Notes under the pieces: generated by a model
Database searches by the model: none
The model's input: only the letters and a program-made list of their open reading frames with translations
What the model was told of the DNA's origin: nothing
Part shown: one piece after another, positions 14,640 through 53,000 of the stretch
Numbering within the stretch: the stretch's first letter is position 1
How the letters are laid out: every line of letters starts with the position of its first letter
Made by a program: the position numbers and the translations under genes
Source: Schmidtea polychroa
Taxonomy: Eukaryota
Assembly: GCA_044892525.1 (NCBI GenBank)
Contig: CM097888.1
Coordinates: forward strand, 93,000,001 to 93,064,000
DNA: 64,000 nucleotides
Reading direction: 5' to 3'

Positions 14640-15692
14640 TAAAACTTTTGATCCATTCTACATTTCGAATTATTTCTTTGCCTTGCTTATTCTTTAGAAC
14701 ATAGCTTCTGTCATGTCGTTTTCCAGTTATTTCATAAGGCCCTTCATAACGTTCATCCATCTTTCTAGTATTTTCTTTTTTAACCAATACTTGGTCTCCA
14801 ACTTCAAAATTCCTATAATTTTGTGTAATTAAATTTTTTCTATGTTTTGTTTATGTTTAATTCCCTCCACGATCTCCCTTCTCCGATTATTAGCATCATT
14901 ATTTTGTATATCCAAATTCTCTTTTTCCATCCATTGTCTACAAATATTCCGCCCAAATATTATTTCAGAGGGCGAAAATCCGGTTGTCTGCTGTATCGTC
15001 GCATTTAACATAAATTCCACATCTGGCAATATTTCTGCCCAATCTTTATGCTGTTTGTCTTTTAACGTAATTGCAATTGCATCCCTTATAGTTCTAAATT
15101 GCCTCTCAACTAAACCGTTTGTACTGTGATGATATGGGCTTGAATATATTATTGTAATATGATGCGTTTTCAACACTTCTAAAAGGAGTTGAGATTCAAA
15201 TGTTTTTCCTCTATCGGAGTGAATGATTTTAGGGGCACCAAATTTCAAAATCCAATTTTCTCTTAAAATCTTTGCCGTCGTCTTTTCATCCTGATGAGCA
15301 ACTGCCGTCAATGATATATACCTACCGAATTATTCAATTATAGCTAAAATATATTGTTTTCCATGAATTGTTTTCTTAAATGGTCCGCAGAAATCAATAA
15401 ATATCTCTTTGAAAACTTCATCTGTACTCTGTTTAATCAGCGGTTCTTTTGTTCGTCTTGTCCACGTCTTCCGTTTCTGACACTGTTCACAATTTTCAAT
15501 CACTCTTCTAACTTCATTTTCACTAATTTTCATTTTCATATTTTTCCGTGCATATTCGTAAATTTTTTTTACCCCTGCGTGACATAAGTCTTTATGTATA
15601 TTAAAAATTACACCTTCATTATTTACTTTTATTTCTTGGTCCATATTTTCTATGGCCAATATTTTAGTTTTATTTTTATCTACCTTGGCGTT
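14640..15692 (-). pseudogene. Ty3/Gypsy integrase (H2C2 zinc finger, DDE core, GPY/F)
   Basis: HKDLCHAGVKK...CEQC, IDFCGPF, IHSDRGKTFES, TNGLVERQFRTI and YEGPYEI. In-frame TAA at ~15330 and one frameshift near 14830. Confidence 0.92.
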
Positions 15693-25934: not shown

Positions 25935-28790
25935 TCAGGTTTCTAAAGTTTTTGATTCGACATCAATGAACGCTGTAGTAGTGACAGGGATAGTAGAGAT
26001 AGGGGTGGTAGTGACAGAGTTGGTAGTGACAGAGGTGGTAGTGACAGCGGTGGTAGTGACAGAGGCGGTGGTGACAGAGGCGGTGGTGACAGAGGTGGTG
26101 GTGACAGAGGTGGTGGTGACAGAGGTGGTGGTGACAGAGGCGGTGGTGACAGAGGTAGTGGTGACAGAGGCGGTGGTGACAGAGGTGGTGGTGACAGAGG
26201 TGGTGGTGACAGAGATGATGGTGACAGAGGTGGTGGTGACACAGGTGGTGGTGACAAAGGCAGTGGTAACAGAGGTGGTGGTGACAGAGGTGGTGGTGAC
26301 AGAGGCGGTGGTGACATAGGGGGTGGTGACAGAGGTGGTGGTGACAGAGGTGGTGGTGACAGAGGTGGTGGTGACAGAGGTGGTGGTGACAGAAGTTGTG
26401 GTGACAGAAGTGGTGGTGACAGAAGTGGTGGTGACAGAAGTGGTGGTGACAGAAGTGGTGGTGACAGAAGTGGTGGTGACAGAAGTGGTGGTGACAGCAG
26501 TGGTGGTGACAGAAGTGGTGGTGACAGAAGTGGTGGTGACAGATGTGGTGGTGACAGAGGCGGTGGTGACAGCGGTGGTGGTGACAGAGGTGGTGGTGAC
26601 AGAAGTGGTGGTGACAGAGGTGGTGGTGACAGTAGTGGTGGTGACAGAAGTGGTGGTGACAGATGTGGTGGTGACAGAAGTGACAGAGGTGGTGGTGACA
26701 GATGTGGTGGTGACAGAGGTGGTGGTGACAGAAGTTGTGGTGACAGAAGTGACAGAGGTGGTGGTGACAGAGGTGGTGGTGACAGAAGTGGTGGTGACAG
26801 AAGTGGTGGTGACAGCAGTGGTGGTGACAGAAGTGGTGGTGACAGCAGTGGTGGTGACAGAAGTGGTGGTGACAGATGTGGTGGTGACAGAGGCGGTGGT
26901 GACAGCGGTGGTGGTGACAGAGGTGGTGGTGACAGAGGTGGTGGTGACAGAAGTTGTGGTGACAGAAGTGACAGAGGTGGTGATGACAGAGGTGATAGTG
27001 ACAGAGGTGGTGGTGACAGAGGTGGTGGTGACAGAGGTGGTGGTGACAGAGGTGGTGGTGACAGAAGTTGTGGTGACAGAAGTGGTGGTGACAGAAGTTG
27101 TGGTGACAGAAGTGGTGGTGACAGAGGTGGTGGTGACAGAAGTTGTGGTGACAGAAGTGACAGAGGTGGTGATGACAGATTTGATAGTGACAGAGGTGGT
27201 GGTGACAGAGGTGGTGGTGACAGAGGTGGTGGTGACAGAGGTGGTGGTGACAGAAGTTGTGGTGACAGAAGTGACAGAGGTGGTGATGACAGATTTGATA
27301 GTGACAGAGGTGGTGGTGACAGAGGTGGTGGTGACAGAGGTGGTGGTGACAGAGGTGGTGGTGACAGAAGTGGTGGTGACAGAAGTGGTGGTGACAGAAG
27401 TGACAGAGGTGGTGATGACAGATTTGATAGTGACAGAGGTGGTGGTGACAGAGGTGGTGGTGACAGAAGTGGTGGTGACAGAAGTGGTGGTGACAGCAGT
27501 GGTGGTGACAGCAGTGGTGGTGACAGAAGTGGTGGTGACAGATGTGGTGGTGACAGAAGTGACAGAGGTGGTGGTGACAGAGGTGGTGGTGACAGAAGTT
27601 GTGGTGACAGAAGTGACAGAGGTGGTGGTGACAGAGGTGGTGGTGACAGAGGTGGTGGTGACAGAGGTGGTGGTGACAGAAGTGGTGGTGACAGCAGTGG
27701 TGGTGACAGAAGTGGTGGTGACAGATGTGGTGGTGACAGAGGCGGTGGTGACAGCGGTGGTGGTGACAGAGGTGGTGGTGACAGAGGTGGTGGTGACAGA
27801 AGTTGTGGTGACAGAAGTGACAGAGGTGGTGATGACAGAGGTGATAGTGACAGAGGTGGTGGTGACAGAGGTGGTGGTGACAGCAGTGGTGGTGACAGAA
27901 GTGGTGGTGACAGCAGTGGTGGTGACAGAAGTGGTGGTGACAGATGTGGTGGTGACAGAGGCGGTGGTGACAGCGGTGGTGGTGACAGAGGTGGTGGTGA
28001 CAGAGGTGGTGGTGACAGAGGCGGTGGTGACAGCGGTGGTGGTGACAGAGGTGGTGGTGACAGAGGTGGTGGTGACAGAAGTTGTGGTGACAGAAGTGAC
28101 AGAGGTGGTGATGACAGAGGTGATAGTGACAGAGGTGGTGGTGACAGAGGTGGTGGTGACAGAAGTTGTGGTGACAGAAGTGGTGGTGACAGAAGTTGTG
28201 GTGACAGAAGTGGTGGTGACAGAGGTGGTGGTGACAGAAGTTGTGGTGACAGAAGTGACAGAGGTGGTGATGACAGATTTGATAGTGACAGAGGTGGTGG
28301 TGACAGAGGTGGTGGTGACAGAGGTGGTGGTGACAGAGGTGGTGGTGACAGAAGTTGTGGTGACAGAAGTGACAGAGGTGGTGATGACAGATTTGATAGT
28401 GACAGAGGTGGTGGTGACAGAGGTGGTGGTGACAGAGGTGGTGGTGACAGAAGTTGTGGTGACAGAAGTGGCAGAGGTGGTGATGACAGAGGTGATAGTG
28501 ACAGAAGTGGTGGTGGCAGAGGTGGTGATGACAGAAGTTGTGGTGACAGAAGTGACAGAGGTGGTGATGACAGAAGTTGTGGTGACAGAAGTGGCAGAGG
28601 TGGTGATGACAGAGGTGATAGTGACAGAAGTGGTGGTGGCAGAGGTGGTGATGACAGAAGTTGTGGTGACAGAAGTGACAGAGGTGGTGATGACAGAGGT
28701 GATAGTGACAGAAGTGGTGGTGGCAGAGTTGGTGGTGACAGAAGTGGTTGTCACAGAGGTGATTGTGACAGAGGTGGTAATGGCAGAGTA
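25935..28790 (-). repeat. ~2.8 kb GC-rich 15-bp minisatellite (gtggtggtgacagag); may encode a Thr/Ser/Val mucin-like repeat
   Basis: 15-bp units with 9-bp and variant units. The minus T-frame is open for 939 codons but has no in-frame ATG or signal peptide. Confidence 0.9.
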
Positions 28791-28951
28791 GAGTAGAGGT
28801 ATAGGTAGTGAGGGGTAGTATAGGGAGCAAGGGCAGTAGATACAGTTTAGGATAGTATTTAATAATTAAATAATGTGGAAGACACAAAAAATAACTGAGG
28901 CACTAATAAAAAAGAAAACGCAAAGACAAAACAAAAAGGTAACATTGCAGA

Positions 28952-29545
28952 TAGGTTGGATTGGTTGGATGGATTGATTGGGTGATTTGGATGAATTGAT
29001 TTGAGTCATTTGAATGATATTGTTTGAGTGATGTTTGGAATGATTGCCATTTATATATGAGAGAGTTGGTTTTGGGATTGGTACGTTGAGTTTGGATCAT
29101 AGAGGATTTATGATCAGTAACTGGTTCCGAGAGTTGCCAACAGGTGTTATCAGTCGAGCAGGAGTAATATTCATAATTATATACACAATTCAAGTATTAA
29201 AAATTGATAGGTACAGTGTGTGGGTCATGTATTAGAGTAGGCAGGTCCCGTATGGCAGATTAAATTGATTGGTTGGATGATTTGGATGATGTTGTTTGAA
29301 TGATGTTTATGATGTTTGCCATTTATATATGAGAGAGTCGATATTGGTATGTTGAGTTATTTTCAGTAACTGGTTCCAAGAATTGCCAAACAGGTGTTGT
29401 GGGCCGGGTCAGGAGTTATATTTCAGTGGTACCTGGGTGATTGAGTGGAATGGTTTGATGTTGAAGTTGTTGTTCTGGGAGGATTTGGCACAATTCCGGT
29501 ATTGACAGTTGATAGGTATAGTGTGTGGAGCGGGCAGGACCTGTC
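28952..29545. repeat. Diverged ~300-bp tandem duplication
   Basis: gccatttatatatgagagag, cagtaactggttcc and ttgataggta.agtgtgtgg each occur twice, about 290-300 bp apart. Confidence 0.75.
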
Positions 29546-29614
29546 TAATAAAATATATCGGTTGCCCGAAGAGGTGTAGAGGTGCAGGTTATTAACATTA
29601 TTATACATATTAAG

Positions 29615-29692
<78 letters not shown>
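29615..29692. repeat. (ATT)n microsatellite, ~26 copies
   Basis: Visible directly. Confidence 0.97.
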
Positions 29693-29695
<3 letters not shown>

Positions 29696-29741
29696 TTTTG
29701 TTTTACCAACCAAATTTTGGTGATTTTTTAAAGGAGATTTT

Positions 29742-30323
29742 TTGATGTGGATTAAAATGGAAAATCAAACTTCCAATAGTTCAATTAAGTCTTTGGGAAG
29801 AATAAGAGATGATCTGACAAAATCTTTATTTATTAATTCCATTGAAGGAAATGAATTGACACATGATCATGATGTACATTCTTACAAATATGAAGTAGAA
29901 ATTCAAAATATGCTCAATAATAAGTTTCGTTCATTTAATTCTCCCAAATCTGACAATTTCAAAATGAAAAACTCTTGTACATTTTCTAATATTATCCAAG
30001 ATTTCGAAAATCTAAAAGAATCAGAGCCGTTATGCAAGTATTCAATGAACATTCCACTGCCTAATATCACAATGAAAGAGAAGCCTACAAATTTACAAAG
30101 TAAAGATCAAAGTAATATTTCGATTGGATTACGAAATAAAGAAAGGCACGTTTATATGAAACCTGATTTATCCCAGGTGATAACTGTAAGTAGTGATGTT
30201 CTTGAAATGATAACAGTTGTGTTGGATTATGTTTCTCAAGTTGTTAATAAAGAAATTCTTCTGGGTATTAATGTTTTCTGCAAACAATTATTATTATTAT
30301 TATTATTATTACCATCATTATAA
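29742..30323 (+). CDS. Orphan 193-codon ORF or exon of unknown product
   Basis: Long open frame in AT-rich DNA, rich in N/S/K. No recognised motif; the end runs into a (tta)n tract. Confidence 0.3.
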   Translation: MMWIKMENQTSNSSIKSLGRIRDDLTKSLFINSIEGNELTHDHDVHSYKYEVEIQNMLNNKFRSFNSPKSDNFKMKNSCTFSNIIQDFENLKESEPLCKYSMNIPLPNITMKEKPTNLQSKDQSNISIGLRNKERHVYMKPDLSQVITVSSDVLEMITVVLDYVSQVVNKEILLGINVFCKQLLLLLLLLPSL

Positions 30324-34360: not shown

Positions 34361-35348
34361 TGTTTGTCAATAGACTCCTTGTTTTCGATAATCAAATGAA
34401 TACTCAAATCCCAACAAAATATTTATATCCAAATTGTCAAAATTCTTTACAAAGTCATAATAACTGTGTATTTTTTCTCTTCGACAAACTGGTGCTTTCT
34501 GTTTGGTGCTCTCTACTTATATAGTATTTTATTTCCCATTAATATTTCCCTCATCTTGAGTTTGTTGAAGAATTTATTGCCAATTATCCCAATTCCAGAC
34601 AAGTCATTCATCTGAAAATGAGCTAGGTATATTGAAGAGGTTTTTGCCCATTATCTTAATTTCCGGCAACCGATTGATCTAACACTTGACTGAATAGCTA
34701 TTGATAAATGGACTCACCTTAAGATCATTTAATTAATTTGTTTGTTTTTGGGCTCCTGAACTGCCTATAAATCTCTGATTAATTTTAAATAATTTTATGC
34801 GTTTTCAGAATCTCATTCTTCGCCGATTACCACTTTTCCATTTGAAAATATTGATTTTTACTCAGAGTGGAGCGGTCACGGGTACAGATCTTAATAGTAG
34901 TAGAAATTATTCAAGTGAGATCCTTGAAAACTGAAGTGAATAAGAGTTCTATGTGAACAGTAGATGTTCCGTACAAGAATTAATTTTTGTCATTAAAAAA
35001 TCATGGACCTCACAAGCGCCAATAGAACCTAATCACAACACGAACAGATTTAAAATACATCAAAGAGCGACGACGGTTAATTAATGGCAGAATTATGTCA
35101 TGAGAAGGGGCTTTTATATTGAATTAGAAACAAATTTTGAAATAGAAATCTCGCTTTTTGAATTTTGTTATGAATAAAATTATTCACTTAGTTGTTTAAA
35201 ATATTCATTAAACGTATAAAGCTAATATGCTATTAAAATGATGATAAATTAAAATAATTTATAACCTACAAAAAATAAATTTATGATTTTTGTTTAAATG
35301 TGATAATTATATCATTAATTAAAAAAAATCATTTCAAATTTATACACA

Positions 35349-35949
35349 ATGTCTGAAGGAAATACTTTAAAAGTTCATGTTGAATATTGGTATTAATTAG
35401 TAATGAGGAATATAATCATTATTAACTTGTTTATTAACCTTCAGTGGGGGATGAGGTTACGCCAGCCATTATGCGAGCTTGCGGAACGCCATCAATGCTC
35501 AAGTGCCAGGCATTGAATGGAGTTATGTCGTTGGTCGAACAAGTATATTTTATTATTGCATTGGTAATAATTGCTAAAATGGCGCCCTGTTTTGTGAGTA
35601 TGGTAAAATGTTTATCAATCAGTGAGGATTGATTGTAGTGGTCTGCAATGATTAGAATTATTAGGCTTGCTTCCAATAGCTGGATTGCGAATGCTATGGA
35701 AATATTTCCAATTTAATATTCTCTATTCTCTAGCTTCATTCGAGATCTCGGTCAATGACGTTCTCGTGTTCTCCAAGCTGAAATGTGGCGGATTTCCTGA
35801 CTATGATGACGTAAGCAGCTGCATTGTGAGATAATTATGCTTATTGCTGAGCGTTTCAGATCATCAAATTGCTGAATGCCGTCCTAGCCGGTGAGAAGCC
35901 ATATTTGATCACTAACTTCAAGCCGAATCCATCTTGCAATATTTTGTAA
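35349..35949 (+). CDS. MIEN1: Rdx-family selenoprotein, SELENOW2/MIEN1-like, 101 aa, Sec at residue 17
   Basis: Exons 35349-35389, 35445-35542, 35734-35810 and 35860-35949, with GT-AG introns of 55, 191 and 49 nt and consistent phases. Protein: MSEGNTLKVHVEYCGGUGYASHYASLRNAINAQVPGIEWSYVVGRTTSFEISVNDVLVFSKLKCGGFPDYDDIIKLLNAVLAGEKPYLITNFKPNPSCNIL. TGA at 35452-35454. VEYCxxU, FEI.VN..LVFSKL..GGFP and the C-terminal CaaX match the family as I recall it. Confidence 0.93.
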
Positions 35950-35960
35950 AGCTCGCTTCA

Positions 35961-36016
35961 GACCGCAATGAAGACGATCGATGACAGCTCTGCAGTCGAT
36001 TGTTGGATGCTTGGTC
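35961..36016 (+). promoter_or_regulatory. SECIS element candidate
   Basis: AUGAA core (35968-35972) and GGAU (36005-36008). 10-bp helix II GACGAUCGAU/GUCGAUUGUU, helix I GACC/GGUC, and an apical GA plus 2-bp ministem. Confidence 0.75.
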
Positions 36017-36087
36017 CCAGCTGGTGGGCATTTCACAACATTGCAGCACCATCACAACCTTTTATTGCAACTATTTCTGATGGTGTA

Positions 36088-36093
36088 AATAAA
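36088..36093 (+). terminator. Polyadenylation signal AATAAA of the selenoprotein gene
   Basis: First AATAAA after the stop and SECIS, followed by T-rich sequence. Confidence 0.55.
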
Positions 36094-37599
36094 TTTGTTT
36101 CTTACTTTCAATTGTTAATATTCTATTGATTTGTTATATTTTGTTATTATTGATAATTGAAATTGCGAGATAAATAATTCACCATTCGATTACGTTGTCA
36201 TGGTAACCGCTATTTAAACAAAAATAATTAGCTTTCGAAAATTGACAAATGAAATGGAAAAGTGGGAAATTCAATATAAATATATCTCAACAAAATCGTG
36301 CTCACATTCAAGAAATTGTTAGTAATGCAGTTTATGTAATTTTCATATGGTGAAATAGAATGATTTGTATTAATAATTTAATCTTATGCCTTCCTCTGTT
36401 TGTCAATTGGGCTCGTCACAACTGGGGAAACATTTAGAATAACAAGTATGTTGACTCGTAAATAGAAATTTTAAAAAATAACTTCGTAACCTGATAAATG
36501 CAAAGTTTCCTTGAGAAGGTCATCGAATTCAGATTAGTAGGGAATTAAAATCTAATTTTCATACGAGAAAATATTGTTGAATCCGGCAACGGAATTAGAA
36601 TATTAAATGGCGTGAAACACAGAACCACAAGAATTTTTAAATTAGAACTTCGAAATCGCTGAATAGAAAACAAAATAAGAGAAATTCCACAATTAAAACA
36701 AGGAAACTAACTTGAAAAATTTTAGAATTCTTTGAACCTTCTAGAATGGCATAATTTGTTTTATTACACTAAAAATTATAAACTAACAAATGTTTTGGTT
36801 TATTGGACTAGCATTTTCACATCAGAACAGTTCTCTCATTACACCCGAGTTAAAATTTCGAGTTAAAATTATTGAAAATTTTAATTAATTTTATCTATTT
36901 CAACCAATGAGAAGACAGCAAATGAATTTAAAAAAGAAAATGAAAAATCGTTTGAAGAAATTAACGAAGATTATTTGATAATTAAAATTTCATTCAATAT
37001 ATACTTTGCAGCGAAATAATTTACTTGTTTAACATTTAATTAATGCTGCTACCAAGAAATCATCATGTTATATTATAATTATAATTATTAAAATTCATTT
37101 ACACGCATGGCGGCACGGAGGGAATTTTATTTTAATGAACTGGTAATCCGGACAGACGGGAAAAACAGACCAACAAGCTCTTCTGCTTGCCTTTGATAAG
37201 TAATGTCCATATTTAATTTACATAATGTAAACTAACTCAAACAAATAACCAAATTTTAATCAAATAAATTTTATTTAATTCCCCATCCACCCAAAAAGAA
37301 AGCAACCAACATGTAGCCTACAGGATCCTTTAGAACATTGATTGGGAGTTATTATGCGAATGTTTATTATTTTACTTTACTTTATCTAATTTTTTTTATT
37401 TTTTTATCATATAATTCATAATAATTTTATTGTTATTTTTTAGAATTTATTAAGAAAATTTTATTTTTTAATGGATTTGCTTATAACAAAAGTAAAAAGA
37501 TTTTTTGTGTAATTATTTTAAAATATTCGGATGATCCCCTAACCACAATTTTATAACAATCCATCTAAAAAATAGAAGAATGTTAAGATCAAAATGTCA

Positions 37600-50084: not shown

Positions 50085-53000
50085 TTAATCTTCTGAACCG
50101 AGATCAAATTCAAATATGTGGGCTCCCATGCCAACGACACAAAATAAAAATCTTGATTGATATAAAGGGTGACGAGTGACAGCCATTGTGTGTGGGTCGG
50201 TGACACCGATTGCATGACTGATGTAGCGTATCATTGACAATGCTACCACACCATCATTGATGAGCTTCATCCACAGAATCAGTCGGCCATCGGAACCAAG
50301 GGATGCCAGCCACGTATTGTAATTATCATTATCAGCTTGAGGTAACCATTTAGTTGAGACGGTGCTGCCTAAATGACTAACTGAATGCGTACAGCTGCTG
50401 CTCAGATTCCAATCAGTACCAACCCGATTGATGCTAGCGACTGATACGGATCCATCGTCTCCTCCTACACTGACTAATACGGTGGAACCTGTCGGATTAG
50501 CTGACTGGATATCCATTCCTTGCAGTCCGCTTTTGCCGATTGGCTGGGATTTGTGTTGATATCTCTCGGTATCCGGCGGACCATTCGGGAACCAGTAGAG
50601 CTTGCCATCCGTTGAGCAGGCGATTAGCAATGAGCTAATGAAGGCAACATTGGTAATGCATGATTTGCTGAGCCGATATAGCAACAGCAACTGGGGCCGG
50701 TTGGAACCGGGAGGGAGAGAGAGGAACCTACGGAAAGCGATCAAATGAAAGAATGAATAAAATGATCTCACGTGAGGGAGCCACACGAGCCTGCAACGGC
50801 CACGATTTGTCGGTTGCCATTAGGAACAGCGCAAATATCCATGATGCGGGAATCTGTGTCGACATTAACGAGTTTCGGCAGTAGAGCGCTTGCAACGGCC
50901 CGTAATGAGTAATCGTGAGGGTTCCGCTGCCAGAACATGAGCTGACCTCGGCCTCCAGCTGACACCATGAGGTTATCTGTGATAAGCTCAGTCACACAGC
51001 GCACACTCGAGATGTGACCATGGATCCGCCGCACCGATTGCAAGGCGCACTCGGTTGTCATGGCAACCACTGCCAAACTGCAATCCTCGGACCCGGTCAG
51101 CAGGACAATATCAGCGCCCCTCCCAATGAATGAGCATGAATTGATTTCCTTCCCGTGCAGATGTGGCTAATGATTGGATAAATAACCACACACACACACA
51201 CGTGACAGAATTACCTTGACAACGAGCGGTTGTGCGCATTGATCATGCCAACTGACCACGTGGACTGCCTGAGCCTGAATGAATGCCAATCTAGCACTGC
51301 CCGACCAAACGGAATAATCCCATTCTCTGTGCCCCCCTCCACAGGGCCGCTCAATCAGCACCACCGGATGCTGGCCACTGCCATGAACGGCCAACCGGCG
51401 GAACAGGATCGATTTGAACCCAGTGATGAGTAATCCATCCTCAGATGCCTCGATGCGGCATATCCAGCCAATCATATCGGGATTCCTCACCACAACGACC
51501 TCCTTGTCAAGGCCGCCATTGCCGTCCAATGAGAAAACGTCTCCAGATTTCGTGCCGACATAAATCCGTTGATGCCGATCGTGCCAGAATAGACAGGTGA
51601 TGCCAGATTTCTCACTTAACTTCCTCTTGTTGGTGGCAACGAGTTGGAGCTGCGAGTGAGATTGACCTGCCAATTTGAATGCGTGCAGCCAGCCGTCCCG
51701 ATCACCACATACCAAATGAAGCACTTGCTGGCCAGCTTGGTCTGGGCTCCACCATTGAGTCCAGCATGCGGCCCATTTATCACCAGCTATAGTTGCAAGG
51801 AGAGAGATATTGAACTGATCTGCCCCATGCCTGGCAATGAGCACCTGAAATTATGAATGAATTGACTTGGCCAGTGAATTGGCAACGCTATGATTACCAT
51901 TTGGCCATTGTTGAGTGCCACTATTGCATGGGTGTCGATGGCAGCTCCGATAGCCATGATTTTGTGGCCCAGCTCGAATGTTGCAAGCGTGATAAGATTG
52001 GGCGAGCCGTCAGCAGTGAATTGCAGCCTGGTGACAAACACAATTCCATGTGCATTGCCTAGCAACACGAGTTGCTGTGCGTGATTGGCGTGATGGGAGA
52101 ACATAAAGCAGTAATGATTGAGGAGCCCATTAGCAATGTCACAATTGACACTCTCCATCCGGCATTGCCCTGCTTGCTGGTGGCGCTCCGAGATCAGGTG
52201 GAACTTACCCAGGTCAGTGACAATGAGAATCATTCCCCCATACACACTGATGAGGCGCCTCGGGAAATCCTTGCAATTGCCATCAAACCGGCAAATGCTC
52301 AACCCGGCTGCTTGCTGTCCATCAGGATTCCTAGCGCATTCAGATAGGACAACCGCGCCGTCATTGCCACCGGTAGCAATCAGATATTTGCTGCCACCGC
52401 CACCGCTGCCACCGCCGGCCGGCTTCATCATGACATCCCCGGCCCAAATGCTGCGGCCAGTATGGGGCTGAATGCAAGCCCGACTCGTGCCGTCCCTTGC
52501 CCAGATCCGGAGCGTGCAATCCTCCCCCCACGCCATCACCCCGTCATCCCCAGCCAGACTCAGCCCGCCCCAAACTCTTGCTCCGTGACCAATGAGAACA
52601 GCCGATCTCACCCAATTGACACCAGCCAATGTATTAGCAAGCCTATCAAAGTGGCCTTGTGCCAGCCAGAGAATGACCGAGCGCTCGTCACCCATGGAGA
52701 TGAGCAGGCCGTCACTCCAATTCATGTGAATGCAGAATATCGCTCCCTGAATGATAATAATAATAACAATAATTGATTATCAATCCCCCACAGCCGCGCC
52801 TCATAATATCCCATATATATATACCTTATGGCCAGCCAATCGTGACAGCACTGGCGCCTGCGGTAACAATTGGGTGAAAGGGGGGCTCGGGATCTCCCAG
52901 ATCGTGATTAGATTCTGCACATTGCCACCGGCTAAGAACAATTTGTTGACCAATGCCACTGCCGGATTGCGAAACAAATGGCAACAGTATCTAGAACATT

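What the first reader, a model, noticed from the sequence alone, without database searches (positions are those of the whole stretch)
35349..35949. Hidden selenoprotein gene (SELENOW2/MIEN1-like) with in-frame UGA, absent from the ORF track
Seen: four GT-AG-bounded exons join in phase into a 101-aa protein with TGA (35452-35454) exactly at the second position of a VEYC-G-G-x redox motif, and homology continues for 84 residues after it. Established: Rdx-family proteins use CxxC or CxxU; mammalian MIEN1 has Cys, while fish and some invertebrate orthologs carry Sec. Inference: this organism recodes UGA as Sec and has a Sec-type MIEN1 that standard annotation would truncate or miss.
Basis: partly seen in the sequence, partly recalled or inferred. 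Interest (0 to 1): 0.85.

Follow-up and report, generated by a model that had tools for sequence, protein, structure and literature searches.

The report
Planarian SelW2/MIEN1-like selenoprotein gene
This is a real, expressed four-exon gene of the planarian Schmidtea polychroa for a small MIEN1-like redox protein that carries selenocysteine at an in-frame UGA; the same gene family was reported in its sister species in 2013, so it is a correct but largely ordinary find.

Summary
Exons 35349-35389, 35445-35542, 35734-35810 and 35860-35949 (+) have GT..AG borders. They join in frame into a 101-aa protein with TGA (35452-35454) as codon 17, inside VEYCGGUGY.

Spliced contigs from two independent studies carry all three junctions. 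A k-mer test rules out TGC/TGT at the Sec codon in those transcripts. Exon 3 alone passes the Pfam Rdx cut-off, and its only solved-structure match is human MIEN1. The protein ends in a CaaX box (CNIL).

A SECIS-like hairpin (35961-36016) starts 12 nt after the stop. Its core and helices are canonical, but its apex reads GACA where eight other SECIS elements of this genome have AAA.

The genome is Schmidtea polychroa, assembly schPol2. It holds tRNA-Sec, SepSecS, eEFSec, two UGA-containing SPS2 genes, SelT, SelW1 genes and two further SelW2/MIEN1-like paralogues.

Three SelW2 selenoprotein genes were reported in S. mediterranea in 2013, and invertebrate SELENOW2 genes are known. I therefore rate it a new member of a known kind.

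Minor novelties: the SECIS apex without AA, and CaaL boxes on all three paralogues.

The parts
35327..35348 (+). 5' UTR; this is the minimum extent seen in transcript contigs
   Evidence: The spliced contigs start at 35327 (X2) and 35335 (X1).
35349..35389 (+). Exon 1 coding part: MSEGNTLKVHVEY plus the first two bases (TG) of the Cys16 codon
   Evidence: The joint 35389|35445 is seen in X1 and X2.
35390..35444 (+). Intron 1 (55 nt, GT..AG, phase 2); it splits the Cys codon of the CxxU motif
   Evidence: The paralogue L005 has an intron at the same position and phase.
35445..35542 (+). Exon 2 (98 nt): C-GGUGYASHYASLRNAINAQVPGIEWSYVVGRT
   Evidence: The A>G change at 35508 in the RNA contigs is synonymous, CCA to CCG.
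35452..35454 (+). TGA = Sec codon 17, the second redox position of CGGU
   Evidence: A 31-mer that must include 35454 is held by the spliced-RNA runs X1-X4. The paralogues have TGA at the same position.
35543..35733 (+). Intron 2 (191 nt, GT..AG, phase 1)
   Evidence: The joint 35542|35734 is seen in X1, X2 and X5.
35734..35810 (+). Exon 3 (77 nt): TSFEISVNDVLVFSKLKCGGFPDYDD, the most MIEN1-like part
   Evidence: Pfam Rdx 25.2 bits. PDB 2LJK (MIEN1) at E 0.0018.
35811..35859 (+). Intron 3 (49 nt, GT..AG, phase 0)
   Evidence: The joint 35810|35860 is seen in X1, X2 and X5.
35860..35949 (+). Exon 4 coding part: IIKLLNAVLAGEKPYLITNFKPNPSCNIL followed by TAA. The last four residues, CNIL (35935-35946), form a CaaX box with X = Leu.
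   Evidence: The paralogues end in CELL and CNVL.
35961..36016 (+). SECIS-like element. Helix I is 35961-35967 paired with 36008-36016. Core is AUGAA (35968-35972) opposite GGA(U) (36005-36008). Helix II is 10 bp, 35973-35982 with 35995-36004. The apex (35983-35994) reads GACAGCUCUGCA and contains no AA or CC.
   Evidence: Fold. It is the only skeleton hit in the window on either strand. The core fits the UGAN/KGAW consensus of PMC3753652. Rfam SECIS models did not list it.
36088..36093 (+). AATAAA polyadenylation signal; the 3' UTR runs to at least about 36111
   Evidence: Sequence. The contigs end at 36085-36111.

Best explanation
This is a functional selenoprotein gene of Schmidtea polychroa that belongs to the SelW2/MIEN1 branch of the Rdx (thioredoxin-like) family.

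Shown: a mRNA of roughly 0.5 kb is made from four exons. UGA at codon 17 sits in the CGGU redox motif. A SECIS hairpin lies in the 3' UTR, with its core 273 nt downstream of the UGA on the mRNA.

Inferred: the SECIS recruits the Sec machinery (SBP2, eEFSec and Sec-tRNASec), so that Sec is inserted instead of terminating. The 101-aa product would be a small Cys-x-x-Sec oxidoreductase. Its C-terminal CNIL box probably directs geranylgeranylation and membrane anchoring, as the CVIL box does in human MIEN1.
For: - Gene model and reading frame.
- All three splice junctions are present in spliced contigs from two studies and absent from the DNA run.
- The transcripts carry ..GA at 35453-35454, so the codon is not TGC or TGT.
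- The one listed polymorphism, 35508 A>G, lies downstream of the UGA and is synonymous.
- Pfam Rdx is passed by exon 3 alone, and the only PDB match is MIEN1.
- The paralogue at C3:95.27 Mb has identical exon sizes and phases, CGSU, 42/101 identical residues, pN 0.43 against pS 0.70, and a SECIS scoring 27.9 bits on RF00031.
- The SECIS skeleton occurs once in 128 kb, and that one hit is 19 nt after this stop codon. Shuffles give 0.6 hits per 128 kb, and 20 of 3000 local 801-nt shuffles give a hit.
- Sec machinery and other selenoprotein genes are in the same genome.
- The sister species is reported to have 19 selenoproteins, including three SelW2 genes (PMC3828610).
Against: - The SECIS apex has GACA where the conserved AA (rarely CC) is expected. 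Eight other SECIS elements of this genome all have AAA 11-13 nt after [AG]UGA.
- Rfam SECIS models did not list it even at E up to 10. However, three AAA-type SECIS elements of this genome were not listed either.
- There is no protein-level evidence for Sec insertion.
- PSTK and SBP2 were not identified.
- The runs called RNA are so labelled only by a guess; their contigs are spliced, which is the basis for treating them as RNA.
- The full-length protein could not be searched or folded.
Confidence: 0.85

Rival explanations
1. The gene is a selenoprotein gene in decay. An A-to-G change in the SECIS apex has weakened or abolished Sec insertion, so the mRNA mostly yields a 16-aa peptide, or it is on the way to becoming a pseudogene or a Cys form.
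For: The apex lacks AA or CC, unlike the eight other SECIS elements of the genome. No Rfam SECIS match was listed. Two paralogues could make this copy redundant.
Against: The 84 codons after the UGA are open (P about 0.002 by chance). All splice sites are intact and used. The listed variant is synonymous. The SECIS core, helix II (10 bp) and helix I are intact. Spliced contigs were assembled in all three RNA-type runs laid, so the mRNA is present; contig depth cannot be used as a measure of its level.
Confidence: 0.09
2. The UGA is decoded without Sec, either by near-cognate read-through (Trp, Cys or Arg) or by RNA editing of the codon.
For: None directly. The first base of the codon (35452) has a 1 in 10 chance of lying outside the sampled k-mer.
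Against: The UGA sits exactly at the Sec position of a CxxU family. A SECIS-like element and a full Sec machinery are present. No difference at the codon was listed in the RNA contigs.
Confidence: 0.03
3. The reading frame is a chance open frame, or the transcript is non-coding.
For: None.
Against: Pfam Rdx and MIEN1 matches, a paralogue with the same structure, and in-phase splicing confirmed by transcripts.
Confidence: 0.01

Closest known systems
SelW2 selenoproteins of Schmidtea mediterranea (Sm.SelW2_a/b/c; Jiang et al. 2013, PMC3828610) and invertebrate SELENOW2 in general (PMC13134290, PMC3473315)
   Same: The host is a sister species of the same genus. Both are small Rdx proteins with CxxU. 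The first intron lies at the redox motif, and a SECIS sits in the 3' UTR. The genome here also holds three SelW2-type loci and two SPS2 genes, the same counts as published for S. mediterranea.
   Different: One-to-one orthology could not be tested, because no S. mediterranea sequence was reachable with these tools. The published work does not mention the CaaX ending or a SECIS apex without AA.
Human MIEN1 (C17orf37, Rdx12; PDB 2LJK)
   Same: It is the only solved structure matched: exon 3, SFEISVNDVLVFSKLKCGGFPD, aligns with [22 protein letters not shown]. Both have a redox motif at the end of the first strand. Both end in a CaaX box with Leu in the last position (CNIL here, CVIL in MIEN1; PMC6738349). 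Size is similar (101 versus 115 aa).
   Different: MIEN1 has Cys (CxxC) and no SECIS. By published phylogeny MIEN1 arose by duplication in jawed vertebrates, so the planarian gene is a co-orthologue or SELENOW2-branch member, not MIEN1 itself. The ITAM motif described for MIEN1 was not tested.
Selenoprotein W1 (SELENOW) and the SelW1-type genes of this genome (C1:12.26-12.30 Mb)
   Same: Rdx fold family, a CGxUGY motif and a 3' UTR SECIS.
   Different: SelW1-type proteins have ...WFEVEVNGKL(I/V)HSKK..NGDGFVD and no CaaX ending. PDB SelW was not matched by exon 3.
Canonical eukaryotic SECIS, type II
   Same: The core fits UGAN/KGAW (AUGAA / GGAU). Helix II is 10 bp and is followed by a small extra stem. 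Helix I is present. The apex starts 11 nt after AUGA, the same spacing as in the paralogues.
   Different: The apical unpaired bases are GA(CA) instead of AA(A) or CC.

Membership tests
Rdx family (Pfam PF10262) | Profile match above the curated cut-off | tested here: met
   Exon 3 alone scores 25.2 bits against a cut-off of 22.6. The six-frame genome scan gives 25.5 bits at this locus.
Rdx family (Pfam PF10262) | CxxC or CxxU motif directly after the first beta-strand | tested here: met
   KVHVEY-C-G-G-U-GY. The motif sits at the same place as CGSU, CGAU and CxSU in other Rdx genes of this genome.
Rdx family (Pfam PF10262) | Thioredoxin-like beta-alpha-beta-beta-beta-alpha fold | not tested
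SELENOW2/MIEN1 subgroup | Closer to MIEN1/SELENOW2 than to SELENOW1 | tested here: met
   The only PDB match is MIEN1 2LJK, and SelW was not matched. The LVFSKLxxGGFP motif is shared with the two CaaX-ending paralogues but not with the SelW1-type loci. The evidence rests on short segments.
SELENOW2/MIEN1 subgroup | Placement in the SELENOW2 or the MIEN1 clade of a gene tree | not tested
   No vertebrate or other invertebrate sequences could be retrieved. Published work places all invertebrate genes in the SELENOW2 branch (PMC13134290).
MIEN1 | C-terminal CaaX box with X = Leu (substrate of geranylgeranyl transferase I) | tested here: met
   The protein ends in CNIL, against CVIL in MIEN1 (PMC6738349). 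Only the motif is shown; prenylation itself cannot be tested here.
MIEN1 | ITAM motif | not tested
   The tools gave no aligned MIEN1 sequence for that region.
Eukaryotic selenoprotein gene | In-frame UGA aligned with the Sec or Cys of homologues | tested here: met
Eukaryotic selenoprotein gene | SECIS in the 3' UTR: kink-turn core (UGAN/KGAW), helix I and helix II | tested here: met
   The consensus is taken from PMC3753652.
Eukaryotic selenoprotein gene | SECIS apical unpaired AA (rarely CC) | tested here: not met
   The apex reads GACAGCUCUGCA, while eight other SECIS elements of the genome have AAA. The literature describes this feature as typical rather than absolute, so I still file the gene here, with this caveat.
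Eukaryotic selenoprotein gene | Sec machinery present in the genome | tested here: met
   tRNA-Sec, SepSecS, two SPS2 genes and eEFSec. PSTK and SBP2 were not identified.
Eukaryotic selenoprotein gene | mRNA with the UGA exon is expressed | tested here: met
   Spliced contigs in runs from two studies. The k-mer covering the codon is present in X1-X4.
Eukaryotic selenoprotein gene | Selenium present in the protein | not testable with these tools
   This needs 75Se labelling or mass spectrometry.

The most novel reading that the evidence does not exclude
Two linked readings are not excluded. (1) This SECIS works without the apical AA/CC motif (GA in its place), which would make it a natural functional variant of a nearly invariant SECIS feature. 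(2) All three planarian SelW2-type paralogues end in CaaL boxes (CNIL, CELL, CNVL). The ancestral SELENOW2/MIEN1 protein would then have been a geranylgeranylated, membrane-anchored selenoprotein, and the MIEN1-type C-terminus would predate vertebrates.
Probability: 0.45. Interest if true: 0.45.

Novelty: new member of a known kind. Interest (0 to 1): 0.27.

Why it matters
Practical value: this is a real gene that stop-codon-aware annotation is needed to catch, in a planarian genome used for comparative regeneration research. The exact model given here (exons, Sec codon, SECIS, polyadenylation signal) can be entered into the annotation directly.

Biological value is modest. Planarian selenoproteomes, including SelW2 genes, have been described since 2013.

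Two details could interest specialists. One is a transcribed selenoprotein mRNA whose SECIS lacks the apical AA motif; it offers a natural test of how essential that motif is. The other is the conserved CaaL ending on all three paralogues, which suggests prenylated selenoproteins outside vertebrates and bears on where MIEN1 came from.

Tried and rejected
- Rfam over the whole window at gathering scores, and over the 3' UTR at E up to 10, gave no SECIS match. A run over six loci listed RF00031 only for three paralogue SECIS elements, below the gathering score. Three AAA-type SECIS elements of this genome were also missed, so the blank is weak evidence.
- The search for homologous proteins with the 60-aa open frame around exon 3 found no candidate sharing three words. 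The length window of that tool excludes full-length relatives for single-exon queries.
- PDB searches with the exon 2 and exon 4 pieces found nothing at E up to 10.
- The full-length spliced protein was not searched, aligned to outside homologues or folded.
- A covariance model built from the genome's own SECIS elements was abandoned, because MAFFT misaligned three of the eight hairpins.
- The protein atlas gave no taxon. The look-up of encoding contigs found no record. A search for the peptide in papers found nothing.
- My first guess, that the genome is S. mediterranea, was rejected. Two S. mediterranea primers are absent. Assembly size and the length of contig C2 match schPol2, the S. polychroa assembly.
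- The top TIGR00475 hits turned out to be EF-Tu-like, not eEFSec. The true eEFSec was a lower hit.
- The KTI12 family gave a single full-length hit, so PSTK remains unidentified.
- Exons 1 and 2 of the C1:175.12 Mb paralogue were not found.

Full report
**Observation**

Reading 34900-36700 and splicing in a script confirms four exons on the + strand: 35349-35389, 35445-35542, 35734-35810 and 35860-35949. Every intron is bounded by GT..AG. The introns are 55, 191 and 49 nt long, with phases 2, 1 and 0.

The 306-nt CDS gives 101 aa. The protein starts MSEGNTLKVHVEYCGG, then has the TGA codon at 35452-35454, then continues GYASHYASLRNAINAQVPGIEWSYVVGRTTSFEISVNDVLVFSKLKCGGFPDYDDIIKLLNAVLAGEKPYLITNFKPNPSCNIL.

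Exons are richer in G+C (0.40-0.53, exon 1 excepted) than introns 1 and 2 (0.22 and about 0.32; the exon 2 and intron 2 figures were computed with the first, one-base-off boundary). At the window's stop-codon frequency of 0.070, 84 open codons after the TGA have P about 0.002.

**Transcripts**

Logan contigs of three runs from two studies (X1 and X5 from one, X2 from the other) are spliced exactly at 35389|35445, 35542|35734 and 35810|35860. They run from 35327/35335 to 36056-36111. The DNA run X6 carries the unspliced locus. These runs are labelled RNA only by a guess, but their contigs lack the introns.

The only listed difference from the genome is 35508 A>G. It is CCA to CCG, a synonymous change in Pro35, downstream of the UGA.

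The table of differences omits positions near the ends of aligned pieces, so I tested the codon separately. The query 35424-35483 has two sampled 31-mers. A spliced RNA can hold only words that start at 35444-35453, and all of those include base 35454. Runs X1-X4 hold one of the two words. X5, whose contig starts at 35480, holds none. DNA runs hold both. The transcripts therefore read ..GA at 35453-35454, which excludes TGC and TGT. There is a 1 in 10 chance that the word does not cover the first base of the codon.

**Family**

- Exon 3 alone passes the Pfam Rdx cut-off, at 25.2 bits against 22.6.
- The six-frame genome scan finds the same locus at 25.5 bits.
- Against all PDB sequences, exon 3 matches one entry only: 2LJK, C17orf37 = MIEN1, E 0.0018. 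The alignment is SFEISVNDVLVFSKLKCGGFPD against [22 protein letters not shown].
- Exons 2 and 4 are too short or too divergent to match on their own.
- The protein ends in CNIL, a CaaX box with Leu last. Human MIEN1 ends in CVIL, which is geranylgeranylated (PMC6738349).

**SECIS**

The stretch 35961-36016 folds as follows:

- Helix I: GACCGCA paired with UGC..GGUC.
- Core: AUGAA opposite GGA(U).
- Helix II: 10 bp, GACGAUCGAU with GUCGAUUGUU.
- Apex: 12 nt, GACAGCUCUGCA, containing a 2-bp mini-stem.

The core fits the published consensus UGAN/KGAW (PMC3753652).

I scanned with a simple skeleton: [AG]UGA, N, at least 8 perfect base pairs, N, GA, plus a helix I of at least 4 bp. It hits once in the whole window on both strands, and that hit is this one, with AUGA 19 nt after the stop. 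Dinucleotide shuffles give 0.6 hits per 128 kb, and 20 of 3000 shuffles of the local 801 nt give a hit. The count of one is therefore unremarkable, but a hit inside this 3' UTR of about 150 nt has a chance of roughly 0.001.

On the mRNA the core lies 273 nt after the UGA. AATAAA is at 36088-36093.

There is one anomaly. Eleven nucleotides after AUGA, where the unpaired AA should be, the sequence is GA (35983-35984), and the apex contains no AA or CC at all. Eight other SECIS elements that I located in this genome all have AAA 11-13 nt after [AG]UGA. They belong to three SelW1-type genes, both SPS2 genes, SelT and the two SelW2-type paralogues.

Rfam's SECIS_1 model lists three of those eight at 24-28 bits, below its gathering score. 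It lists neither this element nor three of the AAA-type ones.

**Genome context**

G000 has 781,270,316 bp in 1012 contigs, and its contig C2 is 189,691,935 bp long. Table 1 of Ivankovic et al. 2024 gives schPol2 (Schmidtea polychroa) 781,290,622 bp, 1013 contigs and an N50 of 189,691,935 bp. The genome is therefore S. polychroa, assembly schPol2. Two S. mediterranea primers are absent from it, as expected for a sister species.

Sec machinery found:

- At least ten tRNA-Sec genes at 72-79 bits on C1:13.6-14.4 Mb. ARAGORN calls the three I checked tRNA-SeC with anticodon TCA.
- A multi-exon SepSecS gene.
- eEFSec at C2:173.05 Mb. Its best PDB matches are eEFSec at 106 bits, against 41 bits or less for EF-Tu.
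- Two head-to-head SPS2 genes, each with TGA in KG-U-GCKV and each with a SECIS.

PSTK and SBP2 were not identified.

Other Rdx genes have TGA at the homologous position: SelT (xSUGYRRVFEEF) and SelW1-type genes (GAUGY).

**Paralogues**

The gene at C3:95.27 Mb has exactly the same exon sizes (41/98/77/90 nt) and intron phases. It also has 101 codons, a CGSU motif and the ending CELL. It shares 42 of 101 residues with the gene in the window, 33 of them among the 84 residues after Sec. pN is 0.43 and pS is 0.70; pS is saturated, so the ratio of about 0.3 is rough.

A third locus, at C1:175.12 Mb, has matching exons 3 and 4, ends in CNVL and has a GUGA..AAA..UGAU SECIS. Its first two exons were not found.

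That makes three SelW2-type loci and two SPS2 genes, the same counts as published for S. mediterranea (PMC3828610).

**What is known**

Jiang et al. 2013 reported 19 selenoproteins in S. mediterranea, including three SelW1 and three SelW2 genes, and noted the conserved first intron of SelW genes. A 2026 analysis places all invertebrate members of the SELENOW2/MIEN1 group in the SELENOW2 branch and dates MIEN1 to a duplication in jawed vertebrates.

The correct label is therefore 'SelW2-type (MIEN1-like) selenoprotein', and the kind is known. In the searchable library, no paper links SelW2 or SELENOW2 with prenylation. That blank covers open-access texts only.

**Mechanism and verdict**

Shown: the gene model, its splicing and expression, retention of the UGA in transcripts, family membership, a SECIS-like element, and Sec machinery in the genome.

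Inferred: Sec insertion at codon 17 directed by the SECIS, redox function of the Cys16/Sec19-type CxxU pair (residues 14 and 17 here), and geranylgeranylation at Cys98.

The main doubt is how well a SECIS without the apical AA works. The rival reading, a copy that is losing Sec decoding, gets about 0.09.

Not done: searching or folding the full spliced protein (it has no reference), comparison with orthologues, and any protein-level test.

Noticed in passing
G000:C1:13.65-14.43 Mb (L013-L018 and others): At least ten tRNA-Sec genes score 72-79 bits, seven of them with identical scores, and three weaker copies (55-58 bits) lie in the same 0.8-Mb region. That seems many for an animal genome (from memory, not checked).
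   Followed up: partly
G000:C1:60.25-60.32 Mb: Dozens of 83-nt matches to the tRNA-Sec model score exactly 47.5 bits and are spaced 324 nt apart in tandem arrays. They are probably another long-arm tRNA or a tRNA-derived satellite, not tRNA-Sec.
   Followed up: no
G000:C3:111.696-111.700 Mb (L023-L028): Two SPS2 genes lie head to head. Both have TGA in KG-U-GCKV and each has its own SECIS (AUGAG...AAA...UGAU and GUGAU...AAAAA...UGAA).
   Followed up: partly
G000:C3:95272896-95272991 and G000:C229:46452-46547 (L005, L006): The SelW2-type paralogue ending in CELL is present identically on chromosome 3 and on the unplaced contig C229. C229 is probably an unpurged haplotig or an assembly duplicate.
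   Followed up: no
G000:C1:12.26-12.30 Mb (L003, L004, L008-L010): A cluster of SelW1-type selenoprotein genes (CGAUGY...WFEVEVNGKL.HSKK), including an inverted pair, each with a canonical AAA-type SECIS.
   Followed up: partly
G000:C1:110.067 Mb (L001) and C4:92.73 Mb (L012): A SelT gene with Sec (..SUGYRRVFEEF) and a SECIS 38 nt after its stop. Near-copies of its last exon (FPILDYP.WSKLETGRVPSPQELFQIIENQNF) lie on C4 at 92.1-92.7 Mb, not far from this window.
   Followed up: no
G000:C2:111.16-111.23 Mb: At least eight tandem copies of an intronless open frame of about 500-540 aa with an EF-Tu/EF-1A-like GTPase domain (102-106 bits to TIGR00475 positions 30-275).
   Followed up: no
window 26000-30000: A G+C-rich stretch (0.56 at 26-28 kb, 0.40 at 28-30 kb) with extreme GC skew (+0.71 and +0.57). 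It has open frames of 800-970 aa on both strands (25935-28887), which looks like repeat or satellite sequence rather than genes.
   Followed up: no
window 14829-15311 (-): An open frame with an integrase core domain (rve, 29.6 bits, just under the cut-off); a retroelement or DNA transposon remnant.
   Followed up: no
window 50085-52725 (-): Three consecutive open frames of 225-312 aa on the minus strand. Two of them (51167-51844 and 51787-52725) have weak beta-propeller (WD40-like) matches; the third (50085-50786) has no Pfam match. They are probably exons of a neighbouring gene.
   Followed up: no
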